Shown piece after piece: positions 34,984 to 63,029 of a stretch of DNA of 64,000 bases (within the stretch, counting starts at the first letter, position 1; every line of letters starts with the position of its first letter). The notes below the pieces were generated by a model. That model saw nothing but the letters and a program-made list of their open reading frames with translations. It made no database searches and was not told the origin of the DNA. The DNA is taken from positions 3,906,001-3,970,000 of the forward strand of contig CATNEN010000024.1 in NCBI GenBank assembly GCA_950097015.1, given 5' to 3'. The translations under genes and the position numbers were made by a program. The DNA comes from Macrostomum hystrix. Its lineage: Eukaryota > Animalia > Platyhelminthes.

Positions 34984-35541
34984 ATGGGCCGGTACAGTGT
35001 CAAGCCAGAAAGTGCAGCTAAGTGCGCCAAAGCACGCGGCTCCTACCTGCGCGTGCACTTTAAAAACACCCGCGAGACTGCTGGCGCTATCCGCGGAATG
35101 GCTCTTAAGCGAGCTCAGCGCTACCTAAAGAATGTCATCTCTAAGAAGGAAATCGTGCCCTTCAGGCGTTTCATGCGCGGCACGGGGCGTCACGCCCAGG
35201 CCAAAGTCTGGGGCGTAGCTACTAGCCGATGGCCGAAAAAGTCCTGCGAATTTCTTCTTCAGCTATTGAAGAACTGTGAAAGCAACGCTGAATTTAAGGG
35301 TCTCGACGCCGATCACCTGGTTATTGATCACATCCAGGTAAATCGGGCGCCCAAGATGCGCCGCAGGACTTACCGCGCACACGGCCGAATCGGGCCTTAC
35401 ATGTCTTCGCCGTGCCACGTAGAGGTGATCCTGAACGAGAAGGAACAGGTGGTCGCCCGCGCCGCTGACACTGAGGAGACATCCACAAAGAAGAAAGAGA
35501 GCAAGAAGAAGCTGAAAAAGGCCAAGCTGCGTGGCGAATGA
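34984..35541 (+). CDS. RPL17: 60S ribosomal protein L17 (uL22), 185 aa, uninterrupted CDS
   Basis: [61 protein letters not shown]; acceptor-like TTGCAG at 34973-34978 just upstream of the ATG. Confidence 0.97.
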
Positions 35542-41352: not shown

Positions 41353-42416
41353 ACTAGATTGAAGGTGTGCCACCTTAGCAGGTCGAAGTGCATTATATGC
41401 TCAATATTTCGAAATTATTTTTTACTTCAGATCATGTCACCCAATAAAATGAACAAAAAACCGTTGTAAATATTCCAAAACTTAGCGGCCTTTGTACTGA
41501 GGATACTCACTGAAGCACTTTAATAGAGCAGACTACTGCATCATTGACTCCTGTATCAAAATCTTGATGAGCGCTAATATCTCCTTGACTGACTGACAGC
41601 CGAATGTGGGACCCCCATATGGAGGGAGAGGGTGAATTTTTGTTTTTATTAGGGAACAAAATAAACAAAATTAAAACAGCGGGAGGGAGCGCGGAGAATC
41701 GGAGAGTGAGAGAGACAGTATGAGATCTATCTACCTGTCTATCTATGCCCATCTGTCAAAAAACGTAAAACATAATTAAAGGAAAGATTTATCCAAACAG
41801 CACTTGTTTTGTACATGCAACAACACGAATGGGCAGACACACACATTAGCAGTGCCATCAAGCCACGTTACCATATATATTATGTTGTGTTACTTCAGTA
41901 CGTAGGGTATAATTAATGGGACTGATAACATATCTGTTATTTCCTAAGCAAGGTATCTTTAAAATGCATATAATAAATCTACTAATTTTACGTTGCGAGA
42001 ATGTACTAATGTACCAGCGATTATTGACACTTTCATATAGTACAAAATTAGGATTGATGATGACAGACTGAAATGCGTTGCACTTTAAAAAGTACTCGCC
42101 CACTTCAAAGTACGCACTTTAAATGAATACCAGAGTACTCTATTGCTACGCCCTTAAAGAGTACCAGAGTACGAGTACTTAAGAGTGCTCAAAGAGTACA
42201 CTGTGAAAACACTGCCTTAAACAGAAACTGGGTTCGAGGAACGAAGACAAGTACTTTACTTTTAATTAACAAAAAATATATAAAAGCAGCGAGATGCAGC
42301 CCGGATTAGCAATGTGTTGTATGTTGTAGCCTTCCTTTAGGCTAGTTCGGGACGCTCACACTCTACCTCGCTCGTCGGTAGTCTCAGGAAGGTGGCGGCC
42401 TTAACAGGATCAGCCC
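41353..42416 (+). repeat. Left arm of a 1,064-bp inverted repeat pair
   Basis: Reverse complement of 51130-52193; the ORF track gives identical peptides (41507-41752 = 51794-52039; 41858-42103 = 51443-51688); spot checks were identical. Confidence 0.96.
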
Positions 42417-43149
42417 AGAGGTTTTCTAACGTGATCTCCGTAGGCCTGGCATTGCATCTGAAGAGGTGTGAAGTGGTGTAAAATTTTACTAATTTTACTG
42501 ACTAGGCCCCAATGCTATATTGGCCATGCTACTATCCACCTGTACACCTACTACTATTAACTTTGTCAATAACAAAACTGCTAATTTGCCTTTGCTTATC
42601 TTGTTGCTTAGGCATCTCATCCAATGATATCAAATAGGCCTAGGCCTACTGATAGTGGCACAACTAGGACACTACATTTTCTAGGCACCATATTATAATG
42701 TCATATTACACTGCTATAGCTGTTTAAAAAGGAACAAACAAAGATAGTTAGGCTTAAATATCATATTGTCTATATTATTATTATAAAAACAAAGCATAGG
42801 CCCTATAGAAATATAATGCTTCTAATTTTAACATTATAATCATTTATAGTTTTAAATCTAAAATGGATTGTTTAAATTTTTTTTCTTCATTTGTGTATTA
42901 TTTATTTTTCATTTTGTTATTAAAACAGCTGTGTTATAATTGTTGTTAATGTGATTCCAAATCACAACAACAAAAAGTGCAATTTAAACAGGCAAATATA
43001 CTTTCTTAATGCTAAACACTAGTTTGGTAAATGTTAGGAGTAGGCTTTTCAAAATATTTAGCTGCATACTTCAATTGTTTTTATTGTCTAATTAGCACTT
43101 AGACTAGCCCTAATAAATCAATTTCTACAAATATTTATATATTTACAAG

Positions 43150-43825
43150 CGGAGAGCCTCTCCACATCGCCAAATGGGAAGTGTCACACCTATCTGACCT
43201 GATGTCTTGTTACTGTAGCGACAAACAACAGCAGTTCTATTTGTTGTTTTTTGATTCAAACCTAGTGGTGACAGATTTGGCTGGCTCAGTGCTCCACACT
43301 GTGTGCTTACTCCAATTTGAGCACCCTTTGCGAGTAACGGGCTGTGCCAGCAAAATATTCGTTCTCGGTAGCAACTCAAAACTTTTGTGCCTGTCTTCGG
43401 AGATACTGGAAGTTCAAGAGCGCTCTCAGATTCCAGTAGAAAATGTTGTCGACATCGCAGTGGTCGGTCGCCGACTGGTCGTGATGAACAAAGAGTCCGT
43501 GTATTTGATGGGACTTACTTGCAACAATCTGAATCTGCTCTGGTCTCCTGATCAACCGAGTCAAGAGCCGAAGACAAACTTAGTACGACTGGTTGGTCTC
43601 GGCTTTGGATGTTTTCTCACTTACAGCGATGCAAAAGAATGGCTGATGTCAGTGTCTACCGATGTTCTAGCTACGCGTACTACGCTACCATTTCCTAGCT
43701 TTGCTTATCTCCAGCAGAACTTGCTGTGCGGTCATTCGATGGCGATTCCGAAACTGTCGATTGTTCGAATATTTCTCGAATCGAATGCTATTTATATGCG
43801 TGTTGCTAACCGTCGTGTAATATGA
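43150..43825 (+). CDS. Orphan terminal exon or ORF, beta-strand-rich (possible beta-propeller fragment); upstream exons not found
   Basis: Open frame of ~225 codons in AT-rich surroundings, preceded by acceptor-like TTTACAAG (43149); repeated hydrophobic strand motifs (KIFVLGSN, DIAVVGRRLVVMN). Confidence 0.45.
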
Positions 43826-44486
43826 CGAACCGGCGTAGACGACCGGCGAGGACTAACTACCAGGTTTGTTTAATTAACGGTCAGGAGTCAGGACAGATAT
43901 TTCTTCTACTGGAGTAAGTACTAATAATTAGTAGCACTTATTATGGCTTTCTTAGAAAACTTGGCTAGGAATTTTATCATTCTGATTTCCAATTTAATAT
44001 ATATTTTTACCATTTTCTTCTCTTATTGTTTATAACTTTTAGCAACATGTGTGTCACAAGCAAGGTAATTGTCGTATCGTATACTACGTTATTTTATAGT
44101 ATGCTATGATTCCCCTATGAAACGTACTTTGTGCTTTTTTCTTCGAAGTTTAAAATTACTAAAATATACTTCGTGGTACACGTGTGTAAATCGTGTTTTC
44201 TTAGATATAATTTTGTCTGGTGAACCTCGCAATTACACTTTTATACTTATACTAGCTTTTTTGCCTGTTGTTTTTGGGGCAGAAAGTTAAAGCAAAGCAG
44301 TAAGCAATTCACGTCTCTGTATTAACTTTATAGTGAAGGTCACCATTTATTTATTTACTGCATTAATGAAAAGTGAAGAGTTTGTTTAAGGGCGTTTAAG
44401 TAAAAAATAAGTGAAAAGTTTGTCCAAACAGCCCCCTCTTGATTACTTCTTTAGAAACATGTCTCTTAGCCACTCCTCTATACAGT

Positions 44487-44690
44487 CAGTGGCAGATCCA
44501 GGAATTTTGTTTTGGGGCGGTCTGTCAGGGGAGCGCCATGAGAATCACAGAGGGGGTGCCAGCGGCCGAAAAAGGGCGCCAGGAGCCAAGAAAGGGCGCC
44601 AGCGGCTGAAAAACGGGAGCCAGCGGCTGAAAAAGGGGCGCCAGCGGCCGAAAAGGGGCGCCAGTGCTGCGACTGGCGCCCCTGGTGGGG
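44487..44690. repeat. GC-rich MITE-like fragment with ~21-bp internal repeats
   Basis: Starts CAGTGGCAGATCCAGG; GGCGCCAGCGGC(C/T)GAAAAAGG repeated ~4-5 times. Confidence 0.5.
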
Positions 44691-44699
44691 GCATCTTAT

Positions 44700-45416
44700 T
44701 CCCATGATTAAAATTTTGGGCATCATTTCTAGGACACAGAATTGCCCTCTCTGACAGCCAGTCAACGCCAGCCTCTCTCTTTCTTATCCCAGGCTGGCTG
44801 GAGAGAAATATCGACCGGAGAGCCCTGCGCACTGGGATGCCACCGCACTCACCGCACTCAGTCTCAGTGCTGCTTGGGGGCCAGTAGACAGTCTAGGGGT
44901 TTGGGCTGTGTACATTCACGGCTTGAAATACAATGTACAGTCTGGGGCTTTGGCGCCCGGGGAAGGGAGGGGGTGGCTGTAATAAAATTTGGCCCGCAGA
45001 GTGGCGGAGGGGAGTTGGGGTGGCTGTCCTCGGAAAACAAAAAGTGACTCACTTTGAGATGATGCAGCTTTGCTTTGGATTGAGTAGAGATGTTCAAAAT
45101 TGACAGCATTGTTGGAAAACATGTAAAGTGTAAGTGGATCAAATTTTGAGAAAATCTGACAAAGTGGGGCGACGATATGTCGAATTGAGTGATTTTTTGG
45201 CGATTTTTGAGCAGTTTTTTGCACTTTTGAGCAGGAAGGAAATGACTTTTTGGGAATTTGAGTAGCCTATTGCACTCAGCGTAGGTGGTTTTAGGTATGT
45301 GCAAAGTTTGGTGCGATTTAGTTGAGCGGTTTTGGCGTCTATAAAGACAAAAGGTTGCACACACACACACACACACACAGACAGACAGACAGAGTTTTCA
45401 CTTTTATATATATAGA
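44700..45416 (-). mobile_element. Non-autonomous Helitron remnant
   Basis: Minus-strand 5' terminus A|TCTATATATATAAAAG followed by (CTGT)n(GT)n microsatellite; degenerate PIF1-type helicase motif WLSERAILCPRND..NFN at 44706-44760; 3' CTRR end not defined. Confidence 0.6.
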
Positions 45417-45489
45417 TAAAGTATACAGCATTTTCCTTAGCTAGCTTCTTTGCTCTAATCCTTATATATTGATTTTCAGCTGTTTATTC

Positions 45490-46116
45490 ATGTCGACTCC
45501 CAGCCCCACTGCTCAAGACAGCCTGCTTCGGGCTGTACTTCTCAGCACTAAGAATGGTGTCCGACTATGCGAGCTGCAGGCCCAGTACAGGGCCCTGGCC
45601 AGGCACGCCCTCGATCTGGCTGGACATGACAATGTGACTTCACTAATGCGCAGCTTGCCTAATGTAGGCTACATCCACCTAGTGAATGGCGAGTTAGTCG
45701 CATTTGGTCGAGAAACAGAGGAGACAAGCCACATCTGCTCGCTTATCCAGCGACAGAGAACAGGCGGCGCCAACCAAGGCGCTAGTCGAGGTGGTGGCGC
45801 TTTTCGATCGCAGAGCTTTGGCCAGCGCGCACTGCAGCAAGAGAAGCTTCATAGTCGCTATAAACCGCACCACACTACTATTCAGTCTTCTCGGAGCCAA
45901 GATGAGAACGCCAACTATTATCAGTCTGATTATAAGCAGCAGTGGCAGCGGGTCTGTCTGTCTGTTATCAGAGTCAATGAGGAAAGCGACAAGGAGTTGC
46001 CCTGTCAGTTGGTGCACCTCGGCGAGGCCAACACTGGCGGCCTGTGTGTCACCATCAGTAACGATAGGCACATTGTGGACTGGTCTAGCCATGGCCGCTG
46101 GCCAGTCAGGGTCTAA
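45490..46116 (+). CDS. Stand-alone extended LOTUS (OST-HTH) domain protein, 208 aa, TDRD5/TDRD7 (Tejas/Tapas)-like N-terminus
   Basis: LLRAVLLSTKNGVRLCELQAQYRALA..DNVTSLMRSLPNV..ETEETSHICSLIQRQR parallels the TDRD7 eLOTUS pattern (LRAVLQSHKNG..LQGEYRSL..ETARIAQLVARQR), including the C-terminal extension helix; acceptor TTTTCAG at 45473-45479, ATG at 45490; no Tudor domain seen. Confidence 0.8.
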   Translation: MSTPSPTAQDSLLRAVLLSTKNGVRLCELQAQYRALARHALDLAGHDNVTSLMRSLPNVGYIHLVNGELVAFGRETEETSHICSLIQRQRTGGANQGASRGGGAFRSQSFGQRALQQEKLHSRYKPHHTTIQSSRSQDENANYYQSDYKQQWQRVCLSVIRVNEESDKELPCQLVHLGEANTGGLCVTISNDRHIVDWSSHGRWPVRV

Positions 46117-48973
46117 TTGAACTGCTTGGAAACTAGTTGTGTAGGACCTAGCGCACTATTAATGTTGGTTGCTACTGTGTGTCATTTTACAAAAAATTAA
46201 GGTGCCCCTTGCTTGGTATCGCTTCCCCAGCTAAAATCAATTAGATCTTTTGTCCTTTGTGCTGGCCAATGTCGTTTTTATGATTCATTTTATGTTTTTA
46301 GCTTCCCCCTGTATTTTTAGTTTTTTAGTCTTCTTAGTTCAATTTGATATGGCTGCATCAATTGATTTTAATCAAACCTTGTGCCTGATCGATAGAACAT
46401 TTGCTCAATTTTCAGCTTTTAATTTGCCAATATTGTTATTAAATAACGAAATCAACAGTTTTTATTTGAATGTCAATCTGTGTTCAGGGTTAATTAGCAT
46501 CTCAGAAGTGACAAAGTTTGTGCCTATGCTTTGGTTATTGCTTCCAAGTGTCAACAATAAGATTTTATTTCATGACTTACTCCTGCCAATATGCTTATTT
46601 CTTCGAAATGATGGCAATGTGTAGAAATGTATCTTTGCATTTCATCCTTGCCTTGGAACTTTCCACTACGAGAATTTCTTTTTGTCATCGAAACTAAAAG
46701 AATAATACTTTGCTGTGGTGGAGAGTCAACACGCGACCAGCCAGCGCCAGTGCAGCCGCACCCAAAACCCCTCAACCTCAGTCTAGTTGAGGTGGGGGTT
46801 GGTGCACCCAGCCAGCCGGCTTGCTAAGCCAGGGTATGAAGTCACACCACCAGTTCGCACCTCCCTAGACCCCTCTATCTCGCTCTCGCGTTGTATATAA
46901 ATATACGTGCAATGCAGCACACAAACTTTGCTGCCACTCCAACTTGTAAACAAAAAGGCCTTCCGCCTTATTGCAGTTGTAAATTGGACGAATCTTTATT
47001 TTTTTAAGTTTTTTTGTGTACTTTTAAATTTCATATTAGTCATTCTTTGTGGACAGCATGCCTTGTGCGGATTAAAAATAGTGCTTGTTTTTCCTTGTCG
47101 ATTTATTTTCGTATTTTATATTCGTTATTTTGACAATAACTTTGTGTTGTATTTTGTATCGATTGACTCCAAGAAGCAAATATATATGTTGACAAGTCTC
47201 TAAAATCACTCAATTCTAACTCAAGTAGATACCTGTTGTTCGATCAAAATAAAAGTGAGCCACATGAATTAACATCATATACTAAGGTCCAATAAATAAT
47301 ACTCATAATAGAAAATCTTGGACATTCTATATATTTGGATTAGGAATTCTAAAGATGAAAATCTGAACAATACAATTTATGCTATTGGTAGAAAAATACC
47401 AAGTAATAAAAATATTTAAAATTAGATAAAAAACTAAATCTTGTTTATTAGTTCTTCTACAAATGGGCTAAGTAGAATAGCTAGCAATGGTAATAAATTT
47501 ACAAAGTTGAAAGTAAACATGCTACCTTAATAAATTGAAATTTTCTGTAAAAATAGTCTTATAATTAACAACATAATTAAGTTTTAAAAACTTTTTTACA
47601 CTCGGATTCTGTTCACTGTGTCTTTATATTAAAATGAGATTTTCCACTTAATTAAGCATTTTAAATGTATATTTTAACACCCACAGGTACGTGAAACAAC
47701 AAGATATGCCTTTGCAGTGAAATTCTTTGCCATTCAATACAAGTTACCCAACATTAGGTAGGCCTAGGCTAATTATTTAGCTAAGTCCATAATTAGACAT
47801 AGTATCTTTAAAAATGCAAAACAAATCAAATCAATCAATAAATATCCAAATCAATGTTGAGAGAAAAGTACTGCCATGCCTAAAACAAAAAGCATTGAGC
47901 ATTTAACTAATCTCACAACAGTTATTGCCTAAAGGCAGTTAATTGCCAAACAGTCAAATGGTTTGTTTTGTAAGTGCTTTGCTTATAATAATTCTGCAGC
48001 CATTGCAGCCCAAATTGCACTATAAATCGCCAAAAGGCAATTAATTGCAAAAATGCAAATGGTGCATTTCAAGAGCTTTGGTTTGGTAAAAATTCAGCAA
48101 CTAACAATCTAAAAACTGCATTATTGCATTAAACTGCTAAGAATCTCGTTTAATACATAAACACTTCTGCTTAATTATCTACGCAGTATAAAAGTAAAGA
48201 ATGTTTGAATAATAAAATATTATTCAAATACTATACATCAGTTAGTATTTAAAAGAAAACTATAAGCTTACACTTACAATGTAAAATAGGCCTATGTAAC
48301 AATTGAATTATTTACAAGTAAAACTTGTACTTGTAGAATACAATATATTGTAAAACAAGTATTTATAAGGTAGTAGGATACTTATATATAGAGTAAAAAG
48401 CGAATATAATAGCTACAGATTAAAGGCCTGAAAAAAATTCAGATTTAGATAGTGATTGCTTGGTTAAGTTGCTTTGAAATTTTTATGTCAAATTTGCCGT
48501 GCGACAAAAATTTCGAATGCTACTGTTAACATAGCCGATTTGAATTTTATTTTCTTGTAGAAACCATATAAAACAGAACGACTGAAATGTACAATTTGAT
48601 TTTTTAAAAATTATTTTAATTCAGTTTTTTAAGCAACTTATTTCTTTCTTCAATTAAATTTTGTTATACAATTTATAAAATGCTTATTTTCAAAATATCC
48701 ACTCAAAAAGTAAGTTCAAGAGCTTTAAAAATGCGCACATTTTTTCACTTCACGGCTCCAAAAAGTCACCATAGAAGCTTTTTGCAGGACGCAAGAATTT
48801 TTACGTTACAAAATAGCACTTTTATGTGCATTTTTTATTCAGTTTCAAAAGGCTTTTTAGTTACCTATTTGGTATTTTCTTCTTTTAAAGATTTTTGCGA
48901 AATCAGGTCTTTTTAACTTATTACGAAACTGTGGACCCACACTTTTACGCAACGCAATGCGCATGATGTCATC

Positions 48974-50029
48974 TTAAAGCACTTGCTAAATGCTATTTAT
49001 TGACACCACACTGAAGGCCTGGCGTAGCATCGTTAATAAATGGCAGCGTGAAATATAGCAAAAAAACGCATAGTACCGGAACCTCGTAATTCGGTAAAAT
49101 GTTAATAGCGTCAAAATACGAATTTTCGCACACTAACGAAGATGGCAGTCATCTGTACGTGTTTACTGGGCACAATAGTGCTCTTGGAAGCTAAGAACCT
49201 CATAGCGAAAATTAATATATTTTCCGCCCTATGTAGTGCTCAAATGGGTTGTTTTTGCACAAAATCACGTTTTTCGATTTTGAGAGTAAATTAAAAATTT
49301 TTTTTGCAACTGACAGACGTGAATGTCACTTTTTCTTAGAGTAGTCATCTAGATGTTTCTAATAAGTACTAATATGGGTCATTCTTATGCTTCACCTATC
49401 CTTACTATAGGTACAAAGTCATTATTTCATTTCCAGCAAGTCACGTGACCTGGCCTGAGGTGTACAACGCATCGTGCAATGCCAGCGAACATACACTCAA
49501 ATTAAAGCACTTTTTAAATGCTAACTATTGACACCACACTGAAGGCCTGGCGTAGCATCGTTAATAAATGGCAGCGTGAAATATAGCAAAAAAAACGCAT
49601 AACACCGGAACCTCGTAATTCGGTAAATGTTATTAGCGTAAAAATACGAATTTTCGCACACTAACGAAGATAGCAGTCATCTGTACGTGTTTACTGGGCA
49701 CAATAGTGCTCTTGGAAGCTAAGAACCTCATAGCGAAAATCAATAAATTTTTCACCCTATGTGTGCTCATATGGGTTGTTTTTGCACAAAATCACGTTTT
49801 TCGATTTTAAAAGTCAATTATAACAAAATTTTGCAACTGACAGACGTGAATATCATTTTTTCTGACAGTAGTCATCTAGGTGTTTCTAATAAGTACAAAT
49901 TTTGGCTCATTCTTACGCTTCACCTATCCTTAGTATAGGTACAAAGTCATTATTTCATTTCCAGCAAGTCACGTGACCTGTCCTGAGGTGTACAACGCAT
50001 CGTGCAATGACAGCGAACATACATTCAAA
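48974..50029. repeat. Two tandem 528-bp diverged direct repeats
   Basis: Units begin TTAAAGCAC at 48974 and 49502; next TTAAAGTAC at 50030; shared GACACCACACTGAAGGCCTGGCGTAGCATCG and further blocks. Confidence 0.92.
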
Positions 50030-50588
50030 TTAAAGTACATCTAAAATTTAGTTCAATGACACCAAGTGCGTCGCGCTCCGGTAATCCGTTCAAAAGTTAC
50101 AGGCTAAAAAGTATGTTCGATATGCAAGCCCCCCGTACCGTCGTTAAAGTACATTTCTGTACCGGCAGCGACTTCAATAAACTAAGACGAAATTTCAAGA
50201 TATACATATTGTGCGAAATTTAGTTGTGCACCTTGTCTAAAAAGTCTGATTTTCCTAGCATGTCGTCGTTGCTTATTTTTTGTACATTTGTATCATGAAA
50301 AATGCATAAAAATAGCCTAAATCACGTTTATCGACTTTAGCAGTGTATGGCTCAGAGTCAGTGGAACGAAACGGCTCAAAATGTATTATAAACATGTAGA
50401 TCTTACCTAAATGACCACATTCATGTACTTTTTAGAGCCTCGCAACAAGGTTGAATTTCCTTTATTTCGGTTCGAATACCTACCCGTCGAATATTCGAAT
50501 GTAATTAACAGGTGCGAATGTACAGTTAAAGTGAGTATCTTGGTTAAAGTCGTGCGTCATGTAAGAGTCCCAGGTGCCATCGTTAGAA

Positions 50589-50636
50589 TGACGCAGCTCA
50601 AAGGTCGCGCTGACGCGCGACCTTTGAGCTGCGTCA
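50589..50636. repeat. Perfect 22-bp-arm hairpin with a 4-nt loop
   Basis: TGACGCAGCTCAAAGGTCGCGC / TGAC / GCGCGACCTTTGAGCTGCGTCA. Confidence 0.95.
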
Positions 50637-51056
50637 GTTGAAAGTTAAAAAAAATGTGCATTTTTTGACACTTAAAAAAAGACACTTTTACAGAATTACC
50701 TATCAAGGTAAGCATTTAGCGGAAAATAACCAATCAGTGTCTTGAAGGTCTAAAAATTCGCCAAAAGTTGGGTTCAATCAATTTTTGACTCCATATTGTG
50801 AATCCTTATTTTTTAAGATTCAAGATTTCGATGGGTCCAAAAAAATTCACTTTTTTGTTGCCATGGCAACCAAGACGCGTTGCTATGGAACTTTCACGTC
50901 ACTCATCTTGTAGCCCTAAATGTTTTACGTCCATAGAGGGGTCACACATGGTTTCATCTCAAGTGGTTTTAATTCTGCATCAATTTTAGTTTCTAAAACG
51001 TTGATTTTACGTTGGGGGAGTCTCCGGGACATCTTATCTCGGTCTCGTTTGTCCGA

Positions 51057-51117
51057 AAAAATTGCCAACGAGGAGCTACGCTCGCTTCGCTCGCTTCGCT
51101 CCTCGTTGGCAATTTTT
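51057..51117. repeat. Perfect 20-bp-arm hairpin with a (GCTCGCTTC)2 loop, 12 bp from the right inverted repeat arm
   Basis: AAAAATTGCCAACGAGGAGC (51057-51076) / GCTCCTCGTTGGCAATTTTT (51098-51117). Confidence 0.93.
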
Positions 51118-51129
51118 CCGGATTTTTCC

Positions 51130-52193
51130 GGGCTGATCCTGTTAAGGCCGCCACCTTCCTGAGACTACCGACGAGCGAGGTAGAGTGTGAGCGTCCCGAA
51201 CTAGCCTAAAGGAAGGCTACAACATACAACACATTGCTAATCCGGGCTGCATCTCGCTGCTTTTATATATTTTTTGTTAATTAAAAGTAAAGTACTTGTC
51301 TTCGTTCCTCGAACCCAGTTTCTGTTTAAGGCAGTGTTTTCACAGTGTACTCTTTGAGCACTCTTAAGTACTCGTACTCTGGTACTCTTTAAGGGCGTAG
51401 CAATAGAGTACTCTGGTATTCATTTAAAGTGCGTACTTTGAAGTGGGCGAGTACTTTTTAAAGTGCAACGCATTTCAGTCTGTCATCATCAATCCTAATT
51501 TTGTACTATATGAAAGTGTCAATAATCGCTGGTACATTAGTACATTCTCGCAACGTAAAATTAGTAGATTTATTATATGCATTTTAAAGATACCTTGCTT
51601 AGGAAATAACAGATATGTTATCAGTCCCATTAATTATACCCTACGTACTGAAGTAACACAACATAATATATATGGTAACGTGGCTTGATGGCACTGCTAA
51701 TGTGTGTGTCTGCCCATTCGTGTTGTTGCATGTACAAAACAAGTGCTGTTTGGATAAATCTTTCCTTTAATTATGTTTTACGTTTTTTGACAGATGGGCA
51801 TAGATAGACAGGTAGATAGATCTCATACTGTCTCTCTCACTCTCCGATTCTCCGCGCTCCCTCCCGCTGTTTTAATTTTGTTTATTTTGTTCCCTAATAA
51901 AAACAAAAATTCACCCTCTCCCTCCATATGGGGGTCCCACATTCGGCTGTCAGTCAGTCAAGGAGATATTAGCGCTCATCAAGATTTTGATACAGGAGTC
52001 AATGATGCAGTAGTCTGCTCTATTAAAGTGCTTCAGTGAGTATCCTCAGTACAAAGGCCGCTAAGTTTTGGAATATTTACAACGGTTTTTTGTTCATTTT
52101 ATTGGGTGACATGATCTGAAGTAAAAAATAATTTCGAAATATTGAGCATATAATGCACTTCGACCTGCTAAGGTGGCACACCTTCAATCTAGT
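51130..52193 (-). repeat. Right arm of the 1,064-bp inverted repeat pair
   Basis: Reverse complement of 41353-42416; identity ends at GGGCTGATCC (inner) and ATCTAGT (outer). Confidence 0.96.
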
Positions 52194-52706
52194 CTTAGTT
52201 GATTGTCTATGAATCACAGACAGAAACTTATTATATGACGAAGTGTCTTAATTTTTATCGTTCTAAAAACAATTAATTAAAATCTTGTATTGATCTGTAA
52301 GACGCTAATCACGCGAAGTGGCATTGATGGTTTTTGTCTCTGTTGACATTTAGTAAGCCTATTTGTCTCCAAACTTATGTATCATGGATGATTTTATATA
52401 TATATATATACTACAATAAATAGCAGCAAGCTTATCTTAAGCTTGCTAGTCAGCAATAGGTAGAAAATGTGAGTTTTTTCTCTATAGCAGTATTATTCAT
52501 CCCTTGACTGAAGTTAATGTTAATTTCTTTATTAAATACACACTTCAAATTTAAGCTAGTTAGTGGACCTAAATGTGAAATCGCTATGTTGTATATCAAG
52601 GGGCTAATTTCGAACTATAAATAAGTCTTATCTTGGTATTATACATAGCTATAGTCATATAGATATGGTATATTGGCATAATGGTAGTTTCTTTTTTTAA
52701 TTATTA

Positions 52707-53461
52707 TGTCGTAGGGCTCCTTACTTAAATCTTACAGCTGCCACTAAGTTGTCGTAGGCTCTCTCCTCTTTGGGTTTAAATATCACCGATACTCTTTTAT
52801 TAAATATTAACAATTGCTTATTTCACACCTTGAATTAACCTTTGAAATAACTCTTAATTTCCTTTGTCTATGACTTAGTTATTCTTCATAGGCTAGCTAT
52901 GTATCCTCTTATTACATATGCATATATTGCTTAACTTGGCCAGATAGGCTGCTTTCCTTCCAAAATTTGGTAGCGTTCTCACGAGTGTCCGAGCGGCAAG
53001 ACACTTCTTCCTCTCCTTACTTACTCACAACTGTCTGGCTCTCTGGTTTGTTCCCAGTCTTTCAAGGCTTCCAATGGACTGAAGTTGCCCAACTTTGCAC
53101 ACAGTGCTATTCACCAATCAGGATTTTACCCTCTGCTCTTTTGTTTTACACTCTACTACGGCTTTTTATAACTATCTCCTTCTTTATTCTTTCGAATATT
53201 CACCGACTTGTGTATTATCACAGACCTGCTTTTCTCCTTCTCTCTAAAATAATTGAATTCAAACACTTTGAGTTTTATTCTCCTTTGTTTTCTCAGAACT
53301 GGGCACGGGGCACCGGTTGGGGATTTTGGGCAAAACTGCATCTATATTTATAGCAAAATTGGGGTGGATGATACGGTGTATTATAACAAAATGAAAATCG
53401 GGAAAAAGCATTTGGCGGGAATTCAACTTATAATTCTACAATAAAATTTGGGCCTGCCTCA
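52707..53461 (-). repeat. 3' LTR
   Basis: Direct repeat of 60840-61594 (offset 8,133); minus-strand TATAAATA near 53345-53352 and AATAAA near 53275-53280. Confidence 0.97.
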
Positions 53462-53640
53462 ACTGGCTTCCCCTATATAAATTTTGGAATAAGAAATACA
53501 ACGCGTGACAAAATTTATAGTAATAATAGCATACATAAAAACGGGTAGCAAAATAGCATACACACAAAGTAAAACGGGTAGCAAAAATAGCACAATAAAA
53601 CGGGTGACAAATGTTATAGTAACACGGTTAGATTGTCCTT

Positions 53641-54855
53641 TTAAGAAAAGTAGCACTCCTCGGTCAGTCTTTCGTTGCGGGGCCATCCCACTGTGCTGGC
53701 CATCCACCTCAACTCAATGTTGAGAGGAATGCGATTTACTGGCAGTGGGCTGCGATTGATAACCTTCCGCGCATACTGCACAGCTCTCTTCCAGGCAGTT
53801 ATACAGTGCGCCCTTGAGAACTTCTCGCATAACACTCGCATGACGGAGTAAATTGCAGCTCGCTGTGGGTACCGCCGGTCGTTGTTGAATAGTCCAGCGT
53901 CCAGAATGTAGCCTTTCATGTGCCGAATCAGCCGTTTGAAATGCTCGTGCTGAGCATGTGGGATCTCCGCCATTGTTCGGGCGAATTCTTGGTTCTCCAC
54001 GGATTCCATGCTGGCATCGTCCTCGTCATCCATCGGTTGTGGCGACTGCTGCGACGGCTGCGGCTGTGGCTGCTGGTACAGAGGCTGCTGCTGTGGCGGC
54101 TGTTGCTGCGATGGCTGGGGCTGTTGCGACGGCTGCGACTGTGGCTGCTGGTACAAAGGCTGCTGTGGCTGCTGTTGCTGCGATGGCTGGGGCTGTTGCT
54201 GCTGCTGCGACGGCTGCGACTGTGGCTGCTGGTACAAAGGCTGCTGTGGCTGCTGTTGTTGAAAGTCAGTTCGATATCGGTACTGAATCGGTACCCTTTG
54301 CGCCTTTGGAGCTATTGGACGACCTTTAGGCTGTGGCTGCGGCTGAGGAACCGGCTTTGGGGCTATTGGCCGCTGTCCGGCCATACGTCGGCCCGGCTCC
54401 TGGCTCGGCGCAGCAATGACTTTGGTGGATCTAGCTCCTTCCATTCGTCCATCCTGAGCAGCTTCCGCTTCTGCCACCGGCGCAATCGCCTGCTGCCGGA
54501 GTAGATTAACTCTCGTGGTAGCATCGAGGAACACTGGCAGTCTTGAACTGGGCAGCTTTCTCTTACTGGCGACTCCTTCCTGTACCGATGTGGCAGCTCG
54601 CTTCTGGCTGTTTGCCCTCGACTGCTGGCCAACCATAGACGGTTGCGTCCTCTGCCGCAATGGCGCCTCGAGTTCTTCCGACTCATCGATAATTGCTTGA
54701 ACAATATCTACTTCGCCATCTCCGGCTTCCTTATTCTTAGTCTGCTCTGCTCTGTCAGGTTCGACATTCTCGCTGTCCGAAAAATCCACGGTAACAGCTT
54801 CTAATAGCTTCTCGAATTCACTTACGCTCATGGCGGCTTCTTTATCTTGTTCCAT
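53641..54855 (-). CDS. Gypsy accessory ORF3, ~404 aa from the first ATG (54855): acidic N-terminus, Q/P-rich repeats, helical C-terminal domain; not env-like
   Basis: Uninterrupted ORF between pol and the 3' LTR, same strand as gag-pol; QQQPQQPLYQQPQSQPS repeats; no signal peptide or transmembrane segment visible. Confidence 0.8.
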   Translation of the reverse strand: MEQDKEAAMSVSEFEKLLEAVTVDFSDSENVEPDRAEQTKNKEAGDGEVDIVQAIIDESEELEAPLRQRTQPSMVGQQSRANSQKRAATSVQEGVASKRKLPSSRLPVFLDATTRVNLLRQQAIAPVAEAEAAQDGRMEGARSTKVIAAPSQEPGRRMAGQRPIAPKPVPQPQPQPKGRPIAPKAQRVPIQYRYRTDFQQQQPQQPLYQQPQSQPSQQQQQPQPSQQQQPQQPLYQQPQSQPSQQPQPSQQQPPQQQPLYQQPQPQPSQQSPQPMDDEDDASMESVENQEFARTMAEIPHAQHEHFKRLIRHMKGYILDAGLFNNDRRYPQRAAIYSVMRVLCEKFSRAHCITAWKRAVQYARKVINRSPLPVNRIPLNIELRWMASTVGWPRNERLTEECYFS

Positions 54856-54930
54856 TGCGGACTTGCTTTCTTTGTCAGTATGACTTCTCTCTCTCTCTCT
54901 GTATGTTTGTTTGCCTTCCCAGGGCACTGG

Positions 54931-55011
54931 TTCATATAGGCGTGAGGCTGACGCGCATCATTGTGTCTCAGATTTCATTGGGCTATACTGGCTTATTCTT
55001 AATCCTATTGG
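54931..55011 (-). promoter_or_regulatory. Candidate internal promoter for ORF3
   Basis: On the minus strand: CCAAT (55007-55011), CCAAT (54977-54981), near-palindrome TGATGCGCGTCA (54949-54960), TATATGAA (54931-54938), ~75 nt upstream of the ATG; motif match only. Confidence 0.35.
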
Positions 55012-55130
55012 ATCCCTACTTGATTTCAATTAACCCCTACCTAATTGACTGGAAGTGGCTAACCCCTACTCCCTTTCTATCCCTTGCACGTGGTTTCCTT
55101 GTGTTACTATTGCGTCACCCCAATCTCTGC

Positions 55131-58100
55131 CTAGATCTGTAAATTCCCAAGTATACTGAACACGGTGGCAAGCCTCTGCAAATAGCCTTCAAACCTCGCG
55201 GGGGGTCTGATTTGTCTGCGCGGACGGCTTGTCACTCCTTCCCTTTCTTCATTCTGTGCAATGTACATGCCTCCTTCTGAGGTGGCTGTCGCCAGACCCT
55301 CAGCTGTCCCTTCGCTTTCGCTCTCCTCTTCACTGCTCGTAGCCTCAGGCTCGGTGTGTGATTCATCCTCAACTTCTATCTCAGCTCCTAACTCCAAATC
55401 TTCTCCATTAATTTCACTTGGATTCCTCCTAAAGTGACATTGCCATTCTAATCTGTCTTCTTCCTCTTCGGATTCATCTTCCTCTGTTAGAACAAATCTT
55501 CCCTTCTCCTTCGGCTGGCTTCCCCTAACTTTGACCTCTGTCTTCTTAGCTTTCTTCTCTGGTGCGGCCTGGCTTCCCCTAATTAATTCCTCTTGGGTTG
55601 AATTAGGCACAATAGTTATGTTGTCTCTATGGACAATCATGATATTGCCTACTAACTGTCCTTGCTCCTCTTTTTGCACTCGAAATACTACCTCTGATAT
55701 TTGCTCTATTACTCTGAAGGCTGATCTCTTTTTCCTATGAAATTTGTGAGATTCCTCACTGTCCAACTGTGGATTATTGATCAATACTAGACTTCCAACT
55801 GGGACTGTCTTAGGCAATTTGCTGTTTTTCGCAGACTCTTGTCTGTTACTGACAACCTTCTCCAATTTTCTTTTGACAATGTCTCTCGCAATCTTCAGCC
55901 GTTCGGCATGTTCTGTCACATAAGATGGATAACTGGCGAATGACTTTGGTTGGCTGATTTGACTGTCCATAGGCAATACTGCTTCCCGTCCAAATAACAG
56001 GTAGTGGGGAGTAAAGCCTGTGGTTTTGTTTACACTAGTGCGGACAGCAACTAATGCAGCTGGGATCATAAGGTCCCAATCACTGTGATCTTTCTCAATG
56101 AGACAGGTTACTATTGATTTAATTTGCTTGTTAAATCTCTCCACCAATCCATTGCTTTGGGCATGGTAGGGTGTTGTAAACGTATGCTTCACGTTATACA
56201 TTTCGCAAAAAGCTTTGAACTGCTTGCTAGCGAATGCCTTGCCATTGTCTGTGTGTAACCACTGACATTGCCCATACTCTGCGAAGATTCTTTCCTGTAA
56301 GATTTTGATCACAGTATCTGACTTTTGATTTCTAGTAGGGAATGCGAACGGATATCGAGTGGTGCTATCCACAATAGTTAGGACATACTTGTGCCCTCTT
56401 TTGCTCTCTTTGGATAGTGGGCCTATAAAATCGACATGCAGGCGATGGAAAGGTTCACTGATAGGGAACGATTGCACTGGCGCCTGAATCGGGTTTCCTC
56501 TCTTGCTTTCCAGGCACGGAATACACTCTGCGATATGAGCTTCCACTGCTTTGACCAATCCTGGTCTCCAAAATCTCTGCCTGACACGTTGAATTGTTTT
56601 ATCGCGTCCCAAATGTCCTGCTAGTGGGCTATCATGCAGATCGCTGAGAACTAGCTTATCCAAGGACTGGGGCAGTACAACTTTCCAACTGTCATCTTCG
56701 CTAATGATTAGCATCTCATTCTCTACCTTCATATCCTCAAAGAATTTCCTCATCTTCTTCAATTCTGGGCTGACAATTTCAGGTAACTGGGGATTGTTCT
56801 CTCCTGATTTCTTCCATTCAATTAGCACTTTAATTACTGGGTCATCTCTTTGTGACGCAATAATTTGCTCTCGTTTCAATGGGCTGGGTAAGAAATCGGT
56901 CAATAACTTCTCGCACTTGCTACTTGTTGCTTGCAGCATATTCTCACTCTCACTAGGATTAAATTCTTCAGGAACTGGACTCGGAAGCGGAATGCTGGAG
57001 TCATGTTCAAGTTCACTGGGAATTCTCACCTCTCCTTGTCCTGAGATAGTAGACTGGATCCTGCTATTGGGATCTAACGTCTTTTTCTCTCCTTCACTTA
57101 GGGCAGTCTGGGGCTGTGTCAAGCTATATAAGCTATCATTAGCCTTGACTTCCTGTCCTGACTCTTCCATTACACTGCAGCTTTGCACTATCGGCTCAAT
57201 AACTTGCTCTGCTTCAGGGACATCAGCTGGTCTTCTTGACAGACTGTCAGCGTTCTGGTTCTTTGCACCGCTTCTGTGTTCTATATCAAACGAGAATTCG
57301 TTTAGGCGCTCGACCCACCGACCAAGAATTCCTTGAGCTTCTGTTTGCCTTAACAGCCAAATTATCGCCTTATGATCTGTTCTTGCCAAAAACTTCTTGC
57401 CTAACAGGTAGAAACGGAAATGCCTCATGGCATCCACTAGGGCTAAGAGTTCTTTTCTAGTGATAGGGTAGCGTTTTTCCGACTCTTTCATAGCTCGGCT
57501 GAAATAAGCTATAGGTCTCTCTATGCCATCTGATTGGATCTGGCTAAGTACAGCGCCAATACGGCTATCACTTGCATCGGTATCCAATACCATCTTCACC
57601 TTCTCGTCATCCACAAATTCGGGATACGCTAAGACTTCAGTGGACATCATCCGGTTCTTTAGCGACTCAAACGCTTCGTCATGCTCTTTGCTCCATCTCT
57701 CTTGAAAGTTCTTAATTCCTTTCCTTGTTAGCTGGAAAAGGGGATGGGCAGCTTCTGCATAATTTTTAATGAAGCGGCTATAGTAATTACATAGGCCAAG
57801 GAAACTGCGTAGCTCCTTCACATCTTTTGGCTTCGGCCAGGTCTTGATTGCTTCAATCTTCGTCTCATCCGTACGGATACCTTCTGTACTGATCACATGT
57901 CCTAAGTACTTTAACTCTCTATGAAAAAGGTTACATTTCTTTGGCCTTAGCTTCAATCCTGCGATTATTAATCTCTTGAACACTTCCTTTAGATGGGAAA
58001 GGTGGTCATTAAAGTTCTTCGAATAGGTAACTATATCGTCTATATACGACATAGCAAATTGATGTTGAATCCCTAAAAGTACAAGATTCATGAGCCTTTG

Positions 58101-59879: not shown

Positions 59880-60769
59880 TGATATCGGTACTGCTGCTGC
59901 TGCTGTGAGCTCTTGCAGTACTTGGCAATATGCCCAACTTTGTTACAGTTAAAACATGTCGGCGGAGGCCTCGACTGTTGCTGCGGCTTCAGGTACGTCT
60001 TCGGCTGCATGAGCGGCTGAGGTGTTACTCTCTGGCATTCAGCCTTCCTCCTTTCCTGAATCAGGTCTTCAATCAGCTTCTTCTGTTTATTGATTTCATA
60101 CTTCTGCCTCTCGATGGTCTCCTCCATCTTCTTATTCCGATCCTCGTCGAATTGCTCGTCTTTAACAACTCGAACTCCACTCTTGTGTGACATATGCCAC
60201 GCTGCTTCGATGCGTCTCAACATCCTTCTAGCCTCTTGCAGGCTGGCTGGCTGTGCAAATATTAACTTTTCCCTAGTGTCGGAAGGGATTCTCGCTCCTT
60301 TAATGAACTGCTCTACTACTTCCTCCTCCCTCTGTTCTGCATTCATATTGGGGAATGCTTGCGCGGACAACTCAATCAAGGCATCTGCGAATGAGTCAAC
60401 GGGCTCATTCCTCCCTTGCATTCTACCTCTAAATTCCTCCCTAAACTCGGCTGAGCTTCCTAGTCTTCCGAATCTTTCGATTAGTCTTTCCTTCAACTCC
60501 TCATACGTTAAGTCTTCTGGCAGATTCAACCGCTGAACGGCTGCAAATGCGGTCGCGAGGTCTAGATTAGCTAACAGCTCATTCTTCCTATGTTCATCCT
60601 GTTCTAATCCTTCATTGTCGCATCTCTGATCAAATGCTTTGAGCCAAATTCTGATGTCCTGGCTAGGTGTGTACTTTTGGATCTTTACGTGTCTCATGGG
60701 TCCTAATTCTAGTCTATTTCTTAATTCTTCTGCTAACAAGCCAATAGCATCATTAATTCCTGCGGCCAT
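59870..60769 (-). CDS. gag: Gypsy Gag, 299 aa, with a CCHC zinc knuckle
   Basis: CFNCNKVGHIAKYC; capsid-like helical region; ATG 67 nt downstream of the PBS start. Confidence 0.95.
   Translation of the reverse strand: MAAGINDAIGLLAEELRNRLELGPMRHVKIQKYTPSQDIRIWLKAFDQRCDNEGLEQDEHRKNELLANLDLATAFAAVQRLNLPEDLTYEELKERLIERFGRLGSSAEFREEFRGRMQGRNEPVDSFADALIELSAQAFPNMNAEQREEEVVEQFIKGARIPSDTREKLIFAQPASLQEARRMLRRIEAAWHMSHKSGVRVVKDEQFDEDRNKKMEETIERQKYEINKQKKLIEDLIQERRKAECQRVTPQPLMQPKTYLKPQQQSRPPPTCFNCNKVGHIAKYCKSSQQQQQYRYQGN
59873..59879 (-). promoter_or_regulatory. -1 ribosomal frameshift slippery heptamer G GGA AAC
   Basis: Correct X XXY YYZ phase in the gag frame, immediately before the gag TGA; the -1 frame is the pol frame. 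Confidence 0.85.
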
Positions 60770-60824
60770 ACCTTTATCTAACTTTCAAACTGACTGTGTG
60801 CTTTAGCTGGATTCCAATCCTTTA

Positions 60825-60836
60825 CCGCTGACACCA
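60825..60836 (-). promoter_or_regulatory. Primer-binding site, probably tRNA-Leu
   Basis: TGGTGTCAGCGG 3 nt after the 5' LTR; TGGTGTCAG is complementary to the 3' end (CUGACACCA) of eukaryotic tRNA-Leu CAG/CAA. Confidence 0.8.
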
Positions 60837-60839
60837 AGT

Positions 60840-62858: not shown

Positions 62859-63029
62859 GTGATAACAGATACCAGATTTTTTGTTTATTAGCTAGTTTTT
62901 CACATTTCTACTTTATCATTTTCCTTTCAGTGTGTCTTATTCAATGTCTACTTCGACTAAACCAATATTATTGGATGTCCCCTTACATTCCTTATTGGTT
63001 CCTTACATTCCTCGCTTTTTATGTTCCCT

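What the first reader, a model, noticed from the sequence alone, without database searches (positions are those of the whole stretch)
45490..46116. Stand-alone eLOTUS (Vasa-activating-type) ORF inside the inverted-repeat element
Seen: a 208-aa ORF whose first ~90 aa match the TDRD5/TDRD7 extended LOTUS pattern, followed by an RGG-like (GGANQGASRGGG) and Q/S-rich region and a stop, with no Tudor domain. Established: eLOTUS domains of Oskar/Tejas/Tapas/TDRD5/7 bind and stimulate the DEAD-box helicase Vasa in germ granules and the piRNA pathway. Inference: a captured, Tudor-less piRNA-pathway module on a putative mobile element could act as a decoy or modulator of transposon silencing, or be a new germ-granule gene. 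This is the best candidate here for an undescribed system.
Basis: partly seen in the sequence, partly recalled or inferred. Interest (0 to 1): 0.8.

Follow-up and report, generated by a model that had tools for sequence, protein, structure and literature searches.

The report
Transposon-borne copy of small eLOTUS gene
A flatworm jumping gene has picked up and multiplied a small host gene whose protein module normally docks on the germ-cell helicase Vasa. The copies look like drifting passengers, not a proven new weapon against transposon silencing.

Summary
Window 45490-46116 (+) is an open 208-codon ORF. Its first ~93 residues are a true extended LOTUS domain by sequence, fold, alpha-5 helix and Oskar-type interface residues. 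An RGG/Q-rich linker and a short C-terminal block follow; there is no Tudor domain.

It is not a truncated TDRD5/7. It is one of nine transposon-borne copies of a small stand-alone LOTUS gene. Its native locus (G000:C37:4282104-4283808) is syntenic with the Macrostomum lignano orthologue (38% identity, same length, same stop position).

A non-autonomous DNA element with CTAG ends ("E1", ~33 copies) captured the whole gene plus flanks. Five of the nine copies are still open. The native copy has a 116-nt frameshifting gap.

Substitutions among the copies fit neutrality (N:S 60:27 against a neutral ~2:1), and so does the number of open copies (5 seen, 6.1 expected). The only hint of constraint is 2.5-fold fewer changes in the LOTUS part.

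The 1070-bp inverted repeat is peculiar to this copy. A composite Helitron sits 73 bp upstream of this copy's ATG. Expression is unresolved. A structure model docks the domain on the genome's Vasa-like helicase (0.85; best control 0.00).

Verdict: real captured gene, probably passenger cargo. The decoy idea is unsupported but not excluded.

The parts
45490..46116 (+). 208-codon ORF plus stop. Residues 1-93 are the eLOTUS domain, ~94-157 an RGG/Q-rich disordered linker, and ~158-206 a C-terminal block shared only with the M. lignano orthologue.
45490..45768 (+). eLOTUS domain: a winged helix plus the alpha-5 extension at residues 80-93. A15 corresponds to Oskar A162 and I82 to Oskar L228.
42771..43145 (+). 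Left part of the captured host module, the native upstream region of the LOTUS gene. It is 72% identical to C37:4282104-4282418.
45417..47245 (+). Right part of the captured host module: 73 bp upstream, the ORF and 1.1 kb downstream. It is 88-91% identical to C37:4282418-4283808. The homology ends exactly at a module boundary seen in other copies.
43146..45416 (-). Composite Helitron inserted at an A|T site inside the module, 73 bp upstream of the ATG. 44252-45416 is an internally deleted derivative of an autonomous Helitron family (5' TC end, 3' hairpin followed by CTAG). 43146-44251 is a 95% copy of part of a host gene at C3:5979759-5980856, picked up by 3' read-through.
41354..51122 (+). 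Non-autonomous element E1. CTAG at its head. Its tail lacks the family's last 20 bp. It has no long ORF other than cargo. The family has about 33 copies in the genome and variable cargo.
51052..51122 (.). Subterminal palindrome of the E1 tail (30-nt arms, 11-nt loop).
51127..52196 (-). Inverted, 100% identical duplicate of the first ~1070 bp of E1. It is joined to the truncated tail through TTTT. This right arm of the inverted repeat is found only in this copy.

Best explanation
Shown: the ORF is a transduplicate. A non-autonomous DNA transposon (E1) captured a complete, intron-less host gene for a small stand-alone eLOTUS protein. E1 has CTAG at both ends, short imperfect terminal inverted repeats, subterminal palindromes and about 33 copies. 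The capture included ~375 bp of upstream and ~1.1 kb of downstream sequence. The gene came from its native locus on contig C37 and was spread to nine places.

The domain has the fold, the alpha-5 helix and the two key interface residues of the Oskar/TDRD5/TDRD7 eLOTUS.

Inferred: the transposon-borne copies, this one included, are passenger cargo drifting neutrally, not a selected anti-silencing device. In the window copy a later Helitron insertion separates the ORF from its native upstream region, so this copy is probably poorly expressed or silent. The 1070-bp inverted repeat is a secondary rearrangement of this one copy.
For: Copy number and context:
- There are ten loci in the genome (89-98% aa to the window ORF over the parts that align). 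Nine lie inside E1 copies that share the same head and have unrelated flanks.
- In most copies 43145 is joined directly to 45407, as at the native locus.

Native locus:
- C37:4282104-4283808 matches only the module.
- It is collinear with the M. lignano contig for the LOTUS gene and for a convergent transporter-like neighbour at 55-83% aa.
- No E1 end lies on C37.
- The orthologue has 216 codons and stops six codons after the conserved RWP motif; the window ORF stops three codons after it.

Neutrality:
- Parsimony on a tree of the ten loci (the native copy as outgroup) gives N 60: S 27. The neutral expectation is 1.98:1 given the observed 77:15 transitions to transversions.
- 5 of 9 copies are free of stops, against 6.1 expected.
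- LOTUS-less derivatives of the element multiplied further.

Domain and docking:
- eLOTUS evidence.
- The complex model with the Vasa-like C-terminal domain scored 0.85; the best of 3 controls scored 0.00. That mark was reached by 51 of 78 solved complexes and 2 of 108 mismatched pairs.
- The runs agree in >=93% of contacts and the partner's pLDDT is >=83. The interface uses LOTUS residues 14-20, 36-39 and 76-91, and Vasa-like residues 218-237.

Helitron insertion.
Against: - The LOTUS third of the ORF has 2.5-fold fewer variable sites than the rest of the ORF and both flanks (non-CpG 0.024 against 0.061-0.096 per nt). This hints at some constraint.
- The native copy is broken by a 116-nt frameshifting gap. 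The only full-length open copies are therefore on transposons, which fits a function that has moved to them.
- Contigs of four public runs of unknown kind cover 45422-46945. Their variants are those of the majority of the copies; at three of the four sites they are also those of the native locus. If those runs are RNA, some copies are transcribed.
- The complex score may reflect the model's memory of the solved Oskar-Vasa complex.
- The Vasa-like residue equivalent to Drosophila F508 is Leu or Met, not aromatic.
- No autonomous partner of E1 was found, and its superfamily is unresolved.
Confidence: 0.62

Rival explanations
1. Counter-defence cargo. The transposon-borne eLOTUS copies lower host silencing in one of two ways. 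As protein, they bind Vasa away from nuage (a decoy or mis-activator). As RNA, they yield small RNAs against the host's LOTUS genes, in the manner of TART-A and nxf2.
For: - Complete ORFs survive in 5 copies.
- The interface residues are kept and docking is predicted.
- The LOTUS part is less diverged than everything around it at both synonymous and non-synonymous sites. That would suit selection for nucleotide identity.
- There is a precedent for a transposon capturing part of a piRNA-pathway gene (PMC7785250).
- The native gene is broken.
Against: - The N:S ratio is neutral.
- The number of open copies matches neutral decay.
- Only 9 of ~33 E1 copies carry the gene, and LOTUS-deleted derivatives multiplied.
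- There are no expression or small-RNA data.
- E1 is non-autonomous, so any benefit would be shared with all transposons.
Confidence: 0.12
2. Host gene relocated and amplified. The small eLOTUS protein is a working germ-granule factor of this lineage. After the native copy broke, one or more transposon-borne copies supply it, while the other copies decay.
For: - Long-term conservation with M. lignano: LOTUS part 58% aa, C-terminal block kept, same length.
- The native copy has a frameshift. It is present in the assembly, and one contig of run X1 has a matching 116-nt gap.
- Three of the open copies are only 6 substitutions from the family consensus.
- The LOTUS part is unusually conserved.
Against: - No copy-specific signal of selection could be extracted.
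- The C-terminal block evolves at the flank rate.
- The gene may simply be on its way out in this species.
- The native locus still encodes a 105-residue LOTUS-only product that could suffice.
Confidence: 0.2
3. Not a mobile-element cargo at all: the copies are segmental duplications or assembly artefacts, and the inverted repeat is a mis-assembly.
For: The two arms are 100% identical while other copies differ by 1-3%. That fits either a very recent event or an assembly fold-back.
Against: - About 33 copies share base-precise ends and have unrelated flanks.
- Cargo varies between shared ends.
- An insertion into a satellite has CTAG at both element ends where other satellite units have a single CT(A/G)G.
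- Both arms run into unique flanks.
Confidence: 0.04

Closest known systems
eLOTUS domains of Oskar, TDRD5 (Tejas) and TDRD7 (Tapas) (Jeske et al. 2017, PMC5458760)
   Same: - Winged-helix LOTUS fold with the C-terminal alpha-5 helix.
- A small residue at the Oskar A162 position (A15) and a small hydrophobic one at L228 (I82).
- Predicted docking on the alpha-2 helix region of the Vasa-like C-terminal domain.
   Different: - No Tudor or OSK domain; the protein has only 208 residues.
- The loop before helix 3 is two residues shorter, as in Oskar and in the Macrostomum paralogues.
- The C-terminal block has no relatives outside Macrostomum.
- Binding and ATPase stimulation are untested.
C. elegans MIP-1/MIP-2 (EGGD-1/2): Tudor-less LOTUS proteins with disordered regions (PMC8331183)
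   Same: eLOTUS plus an intrinsically disordered region and no Tudor domain. This shows that stand-alone LOTUS scaffolds that recruit Vasa exist.
   Different: The MIPs have two LOTUS domains each and are ordinary single-copy host genes. There is no detectable sequence relationship beyond the domain.
Transduplication by DNA transposons (Pack-MULEs and other Pack-type elements, Helitron gene capture; from general knowledge)
   Same: - A non-autonomous element with conserved ends and variable host-derived cargo.
- An identifiable parental locus.
- Copies evolving almost neutrally.
- A textbook Helitron read-through capture is nested in the same locus.
   Different: - A whole intron-less gene with its flanks was captured, not a fragment.
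- The carrier targets CTAG and fits no canonical Helitron or Mutator signature.
- The host is a flatworm.
TART-A capture of nxf2 sequence in Drosophila (Ellison et al. 2020, PMC7785250)
   Same: A transposon carries sequence of a host gene from the transposon-silencing machinery.
   Different: TART-A holds a fragment and acts through antisense piRNAs, with expression evidence. Here there is a full ORF, no small-RNA or expression data, and a role for this LOTUS gene in silencing is itself only inferred.

Membership tests
LOTUS / OST-HTH domain | Sequence match to the family profile | tested here: inconclusive
   Pfam PF12872 gives E=7e-4 and 19.8 bits, under the 23.8 cut-off. The paralogue at C37:4447315, which is 44% identical over the domain, passes with 25.2 bits. 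phmmer against PDB hits Oskar LOTUS at 2.6e-5.
LOTUS / OST-HTH domain | Winged-helix LOTUS fold | tested here: met
   AlphaFold2 pLDDT is 95-98 for residues 1-93. Foldseek gives 3rco (TDRD7) TM 0.87, 5nt7_A (Oskar) 0.71, 3s93 (TDRD5) 0.75 and 8wxs (Tejas) 0.81.
extended LOTUS (eLOTUS) subclass | C-terminal alpha-5 helix extension (Jeske 2017) | tested here: met
   A helix at residues 80-93 is predicted with block-mean pLDDT 87-95. It aligns with the conserved motif T-x-H-I-x-x-L-x-x-x-Q-K/R of TDRD5/7 N-terminal domains.
extended LOTUS (eLOTUS) subclass | Small residue at Oskar A162 and small hydrophobic residue at Oskar L228 | tested here: met
   A15 and I82, from the phmmer alignment to Oskar chains. 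Numbering was checked, and the residues were read.
extended LOTUS (eLOTUS) subclass | Binds the Vasa C-terminal RecA-like domain on its alpha-2 helix | tested here: met
   In silico only. The score was 0.85 and the best of 3 controls 0.00; that mark was reached by 51 of 78 solved complexes and 2 of 108 mismatched pairs. The runs agree in >=93% of contacts and the partner's pLDDT is >=83. Contacts centre on Vasa-like residues 221-226 (DFVGLA). A like complex (5nt7) is solved, so the pass may come from memory. The F508 equivalent is Leu.
extended LOTUS (eLOTUS) subclass | Stimulates Vasa ATPase | not testable with these tools
   Needs biochemistry.
TDRD5 / TDRD7 | One or more Tudor domains C-terminal to the LOTUS domain(s) | tested here: not met
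   The ORF has no Tudor domain and ends at 46116. The M. lignano orthologue ends at the same place. Downstream ORFs of the module have no Pfam match. LOTUS+Tudor relatives were scanned. The longer LOTUS loci elsewhere in this genome had no Tudor match in Pfam where tested.
Transduplicated (transposon-captured) host gene | Parental locus outside the element, identified independently | tested here: met
   C37:4282104-4283808 matches only the module. It is syntenic with the M. lignano locus, including the neighbouring gene, and no E1 ends are nearby.
Transduplicated (transposon-captured) host gene | Cargo lies between conserved element ends in several copies with unrelated flanks | tested here: met
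   Nine copies.
Helitron (nested insert 43146-45416) | 5' TC, 3' hairpin followed by CTAG, insertion between A and T without duplication, kinship to a RepHel-encoding element | tested here: met
   The composite's own 3' end is a de novo end inside captured host sequence.
Helitron (carrier element E1) | 5' TC end and a RepHel-encoding partner with the same ends | tested here: not met
   The head starts with CTAG followed by ATTG. No RepHel lies inside long copies. No terminus-sharing autonomous element was found with up to 3 mismatches. A hairpin followed by CTAG is present at both ends. An insertion into a satellite points to CTAG as the target, either duplicated or shared. The superfamily is left open.

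The most novel reading that the evidence does not exclude
A DNA transposon family has armed itself with a complete Vasa-binding eLOTUS gene stolen from the host's germ-granule machinery. The copies blunt piRNA silencing in one of two ways: as a Tudor-less protein that engages Vasa outside nuage, or as a source of small RNAs against the host's own LOTUS genes. The host's native copy is already disabled. The unusually low divergence of the LOTUS segment at all codon positions would then reflect selection.
Probability: 0.12. Interest if true: 0.85.

Novelty: new member of a known kind. Interest (0 to 1): 0.45.

Why it matters
LOTUS proteins are the known recruiters and activators of Vasa in germ granules and nuage. 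Two points are new here.

- A minimal, Tudor-less eLOTUS protein is conserved in Macrostomum. This is a compact natural test case for what an eLOTUS can do on its own.
- A transposon captured and amplified the whole gene while the native copy broke. If any transposon-borne copy is expressed, this would be a rare animal example of a transposon carrying a component of the pathway that silences transposons, or of a host gene surviving only as transposon cargo.

On present evidence it is a well-documented transduplication. It is useful for annotation: nine LOTUS 'genes' in this genome are transposon cargo. It is also useful for studying gene capture by DNA transposons in flatworms.

Tried and rejected
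- Splicing to downstream Tudor exons: rejected.
- Parental TDRD5/7 locus: the longer LOTUS genes at C37:4447315 and C3:15553729 are paralogues at 38-44% identity, not parents.
- The inverted repeat as the element's defining ends: rejected. Other copies have one head and a different tail.
- E1 as a canonical Helitron: rejected for lack of a TC end and of a RepHel partner. Long copies on C3 and C30 hold nested retroelements or repeats, not a transposase.
- Naive Nei-Gojobori dN/dS gave 0.45-0.70 and looked like weak constraint. That signal vanished once the 5:1 transition bias was modelled.
- Expression: the one run search found four runs of unknown kind kept as contigs. Their coverage is patchy and cannot be told apart as RNA or DNA.
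- Exact-sequence look-ups of six copy products found nothing.
- Literature searches for the M. lignano locus tag and for Macrostomum with 'LOTUS domain' found nothing.
- The C-terminal block has no relatives outside Macrostomum and folds at low confidence.
- The Atlas search returned only LOTUS clusters scoring under 0.9.

Full report
**1. The observation**

Window 45490-46116 (+) is an open frame of 208 codons from ATG to TAA.

Pfam gives a sub-threshold OST-HTH/LOTUS match: E=7e-4, 19.8 bits against a cut-off of 23.8. Stronger tests agree with it.
- phmmer against all PDB chains finds only LOTUS domains over residues 10-90: Oskar 2.6e-5, TDRD7 2.6e-4, TDRD5 3.5e-3.
- An exhaustive phmmer search of 1.84 billion representatives gives 30 proteins at E<=1e-3. 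All but one match only residues ~10-100.
- Of the ten scanned with Pfam, seven have an N-terminal LOTUS followed by Tudor domains.
- AlphaFold2 on an alignment of these hits models residues 1-93 at pLDDT 95-98. The model shows a winged helix plus a further helix at 80-93. The rest stays below 60.
- Foldseek returns TDRD7 LOTUS (3rco, TM 0.87), the Oskar LOTUS of the Oskar-Vasa complex (5nt7_A, 0.71), TDRD5 and Tejas.

The extra helix is the defining feature of the extended LOTUS subclass (Jeske et al. 2017). The two Oskar residues whose mutation abolishes Vasa binding, A162 and L228, correspond to A15 and I82. These are the residue types the paper describes for TDRD5/7.

The RGG-like, Q/S-rich linker is there. 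No Tudor domain is present in the ORF or downstream.

**2. It is one of nine transposon-borne copies**

The window's genome (220 Mb, 42 contigs) holds ten loci for this ORF, at 89-98% amino-acid identity to it over the parts that align.
- Five of the nine transposon-borne copies are open: the window, C1:21327720, C2:4772637, C10:2851573 and C38:21013967.
- The other four carry stops, frameshifts or an insertion.

Nine of the ten lie inside copies of a repeated element that I call E1. In window coordinates its canonical form has three parts.
- A head from 41354, which starts with CTAG.
- The module: 42771-43145 joined directly to ~45407-47245.
- A further 3.9 kb up to a 71-bp palindrome, followed by a 20-bp end that again finishes in CTAG.

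Exact-pattern searches find about 33-35 heads and 33 tails, with unrelated flanks.

The tail's last 20 bp are the inverted complement of a subterminal stretch of the head, so the ends are short, imperfect inverted repeats. Head-to-tail neighbours share a single CTAG. One copy is inserted in a ~35-bp satellite. It has CTAG at both ends where other satellite units have a single CT(A/G)G. CTAG is therefore the target, either duplicated or shared.

E1 encodes nothing long apart from cargo. Long copies contain nested retroelements or repeats, not a transposase. The genome is rich in Helitrons with intact RepHel genes, but none shares E1's ends, and E1 lacks the TC start. I leave its superfamily open. 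Cargo differs between copies with the same ends.

**3. The parent is a stand-alone LOTUS gene, not TDRD5/7**

The tenth locus, C37:4282104-4283808, matches only the module. Identity is 72% over 42771-43145 and 88-91% over 45416-47245. The match stops exactly at the module boundary 47245, and no E1 end lies nearby.

The only full-length relative in public protein collections is a hypothetical protein of Macrostomum lignano, at 38% identity over 94% of the query. Its gene is an intron-less ORF of 216 codons that stops six codons after the conserved RWP motif; the window ORF stops three codons after it.

The M. lignano contig and the C37 locus are collinear for the LOTUS gene and for a convergent, transporter-like gene 1.6-1.9 kb downstream, at 55-83% amino-acid identity. 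C37 is therefore the ancestral locus, and E1 captured the whole gene with its flanks.

The longer LOTUS genes of this genome (C37:4447315, C3:15553729) are only 38-44% identical over the domain and are paralogues.

The native copy now lacks 116 nt of the linker. This shifts the frame and leaves a 105-residue LOTUS-only ORF. One contig of public run X1 shows a matching 116-nt gap.

**4. Features peculiar to the window copy**

*The Helitron insertion.*
- 43146-45416 is absent from the parent and from most copies.
- On the minus strand, 45416-44252 is an internally deleted derivative of an autonomous Helitron family. It has the 5' TC start, a 3' hairpin followed by CTAG, and 95-98% identity to elements with 1702-1840-residue RepHel ORFs.
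- It runs straight on into 44251-43146, a 95% copy of part of a host gene at C3:5979759-5980856. The present-day sequence of that gene is an empty A|T site at the very point where the Helitron end abuts.
- This is a read-through capture. The composite landed between an A and a T of the LOTUS module, 73 bp upstream of the ATG.
- The C1:21327720 copy shares the insertion and has normal E1 ends in different flanks. E1 therefore still moved afterwards.

*The inverted repeat.*
- The window copy's tail lacks its last 20 bp. Instead TTTT is followed by a 100% identical, inverted copy of the first 1070 bp of E1.
- No other copy examined has this arrangement.

**5. Selection**

Naive pooled pairwise dN/dS is 0.66 (LOTUS part 0.45, rest 0.70). 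Parsimony on a tree of the ten loci, with the native copy as outgroup, gives 60 non-synonymous and 27 synonymous changes.

Substitutions from the consensus of the nine transposon-borne copies run 77 transitions to 15 transversions and pile up at CpG. With that bias the neutral expectation is 1.98:1, so omega is about 1.1.

Random substitutions would leave 6.1 of 9 copies free of stops; 5 are.

A derivative of E1 that lost 44015-48333, LOTUS included, reached at least seven copies (the derivation is inferred from coordinates).

One signal points the other way. The LOTUS segment has 2.5-fold fewer variable sites than the rest of the ORF and both flanks (non-CpG 0.024 against 0.061-0.096 per nt). 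Its N:S ratio of 13:8 is still not distinguishable from neutral.

**6. Expression**

Their kind is not on record and they are kept as contigs. Contigs cover 45422-46945, and the variants they carry are those of the majority of the copies; at three of the four sites they are also those of the native locus. Coverage is patchy over other multi-copy parts of E1. That looks more like RNA than DNA, but the tool warns that holes prove nothing. I treat expression as unresolved. Exact look-ups of the proteins found nothing.

**7. Likely biochemical activity**

Three tandem genes at C25:7422343-7432771 are Vasa-like. The best PDB matches are Bombyx and Drosophila Vasa, ahead of DDX3X.

A complex model paired residues 160-345 of one of them with residues 1-100 of the ORF.
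- The score was 0.85; the best of three controls scored 0.00.
- That mark was reached by 51 of 78 solved complexes and 2 of 108 mismatched pairs.
- The runs agree in at least 93% of contacts, and the partner's pLDDT is at least 83.

The interface uses the helix carrying A15, the alpha-5 helix carrying I82, and the Vasa-like stretch DFVGLA. That stretch corresponds to the F504-F508 helix of Drosophila Vasa.

The Oskar-Vasa complex is solved, so this shows likeness, not binding. The F508 position is Leu or Met here.

**8. Verdict**

The interpretation needs three corrections.
- The gene is a captured stand-alone LOTUS gene, not a TDRD5/7 piece.
- The inverted repeat is incidental.
- The substitution pattern is neutral.

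The best reading is passenger cargo (0.62). Two other readings remain open and testable: a host gene now living on transposons (0.20) and counter-defence cargo (0.12).

Precedents exist for each ingredient.
- Tudor-less LOTUS scaffolds: MIP-1/2.
- Capture of silencing-pathway sequence by a transposon: TART-A and nxf2.
- Transduplication by DNA transposons: general knowledge.

I therefore class it as a new member of a known kind.

The scan had also noted elsewhere in this genome a 318-letter 'LOTUS-only microprotein' (s1-306136). By its length this is probably the truncated native copy, but I could not confirm the place.

Noticed in passing
window 43146-45416 (minus strand); parent gene at G000:C3:5979759-5980856 (L066:3759-4856): A textbook Helitron 3' read-through capture. 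A deleted derivative of an autonomous Helitron runs on into 1.1 kb of a host gene with a 599-codon exon (RING-like cysteine motif by eye, no Pfam match). The present-day site in that gene is an empty A|T site.
   Followed up: yes
E1 copies: window 45407-47245 and loci L002-L009: Substitutions among the copies run 77 transitions to 15 transversions and are concentrated at CpG (0.39-0.56 variable per CpG nucleotide in the ORF and distal flank, against 0.02-0.10 at other sites). The genome has C5-DNA-methyltransferase-domain loci at C2:2150957-2155240, C39:20070480 and C11:3925561. This suggests methylation-driven decay of transposons in this flatworm.
   Followed up: partly
G000:C25:7422343-7432771 (L074-L076): Three tandem Vasa-like DEAD-box genes. 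The residue equivalent to Drosophila Vasa F508, reported as strictly aromatic from insects to humans, is Leu or Met.
   Followed up: partly
G000:C38:19320000-19339999 (L067, L068): Two autonomous Helitrons with 1840-residue RepHel ORFs lie head to tail. They are joined base-precisely, with CTAG followed directly by TC, at a period of about 6.4 kb.
   Followed up: partly
G000:C37:4282504-4282821 (L010:1501-1818): The native LOTUS locus still has an open 105-codon ORF encoding the eLOTUS domain alone. It could be a working micro-protein or a fresh pseudogene.
   Followed up: partly
window 52707-61139: LTR retrotransposon on the minus strand. The terminal direct repeats are identical over at least 300 nt (52707-53006 and 60840-61139). 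It has a 1546-codon ORF (55131-59771) and a further 428-codon ORF (53641-54927) with a repetitive stretch.
   Followed up: no
window 34984-35541: A complete ribosomal protein L17e/L22p ORF of 185 codons in one exon (Pfam Ribosomal_L22, 1.7e-34). It is either an intron-less gene or a retrocopy.
   Followed up: no
window 48969-50047 and 63021-64000: A 528-bp tandem duplication inside E1, and a 27-bp minisatellite of at least 30 units at the window's end.
   Followed up: no
G000:C1:24651747-24678680: Three LOTUS-less E1 derivatives recur at a period of about 10,016 bp, with about 3.1 kb of other sequence between them. This looks like a tandem segmental duplication that includes the element.
   Followed up: no
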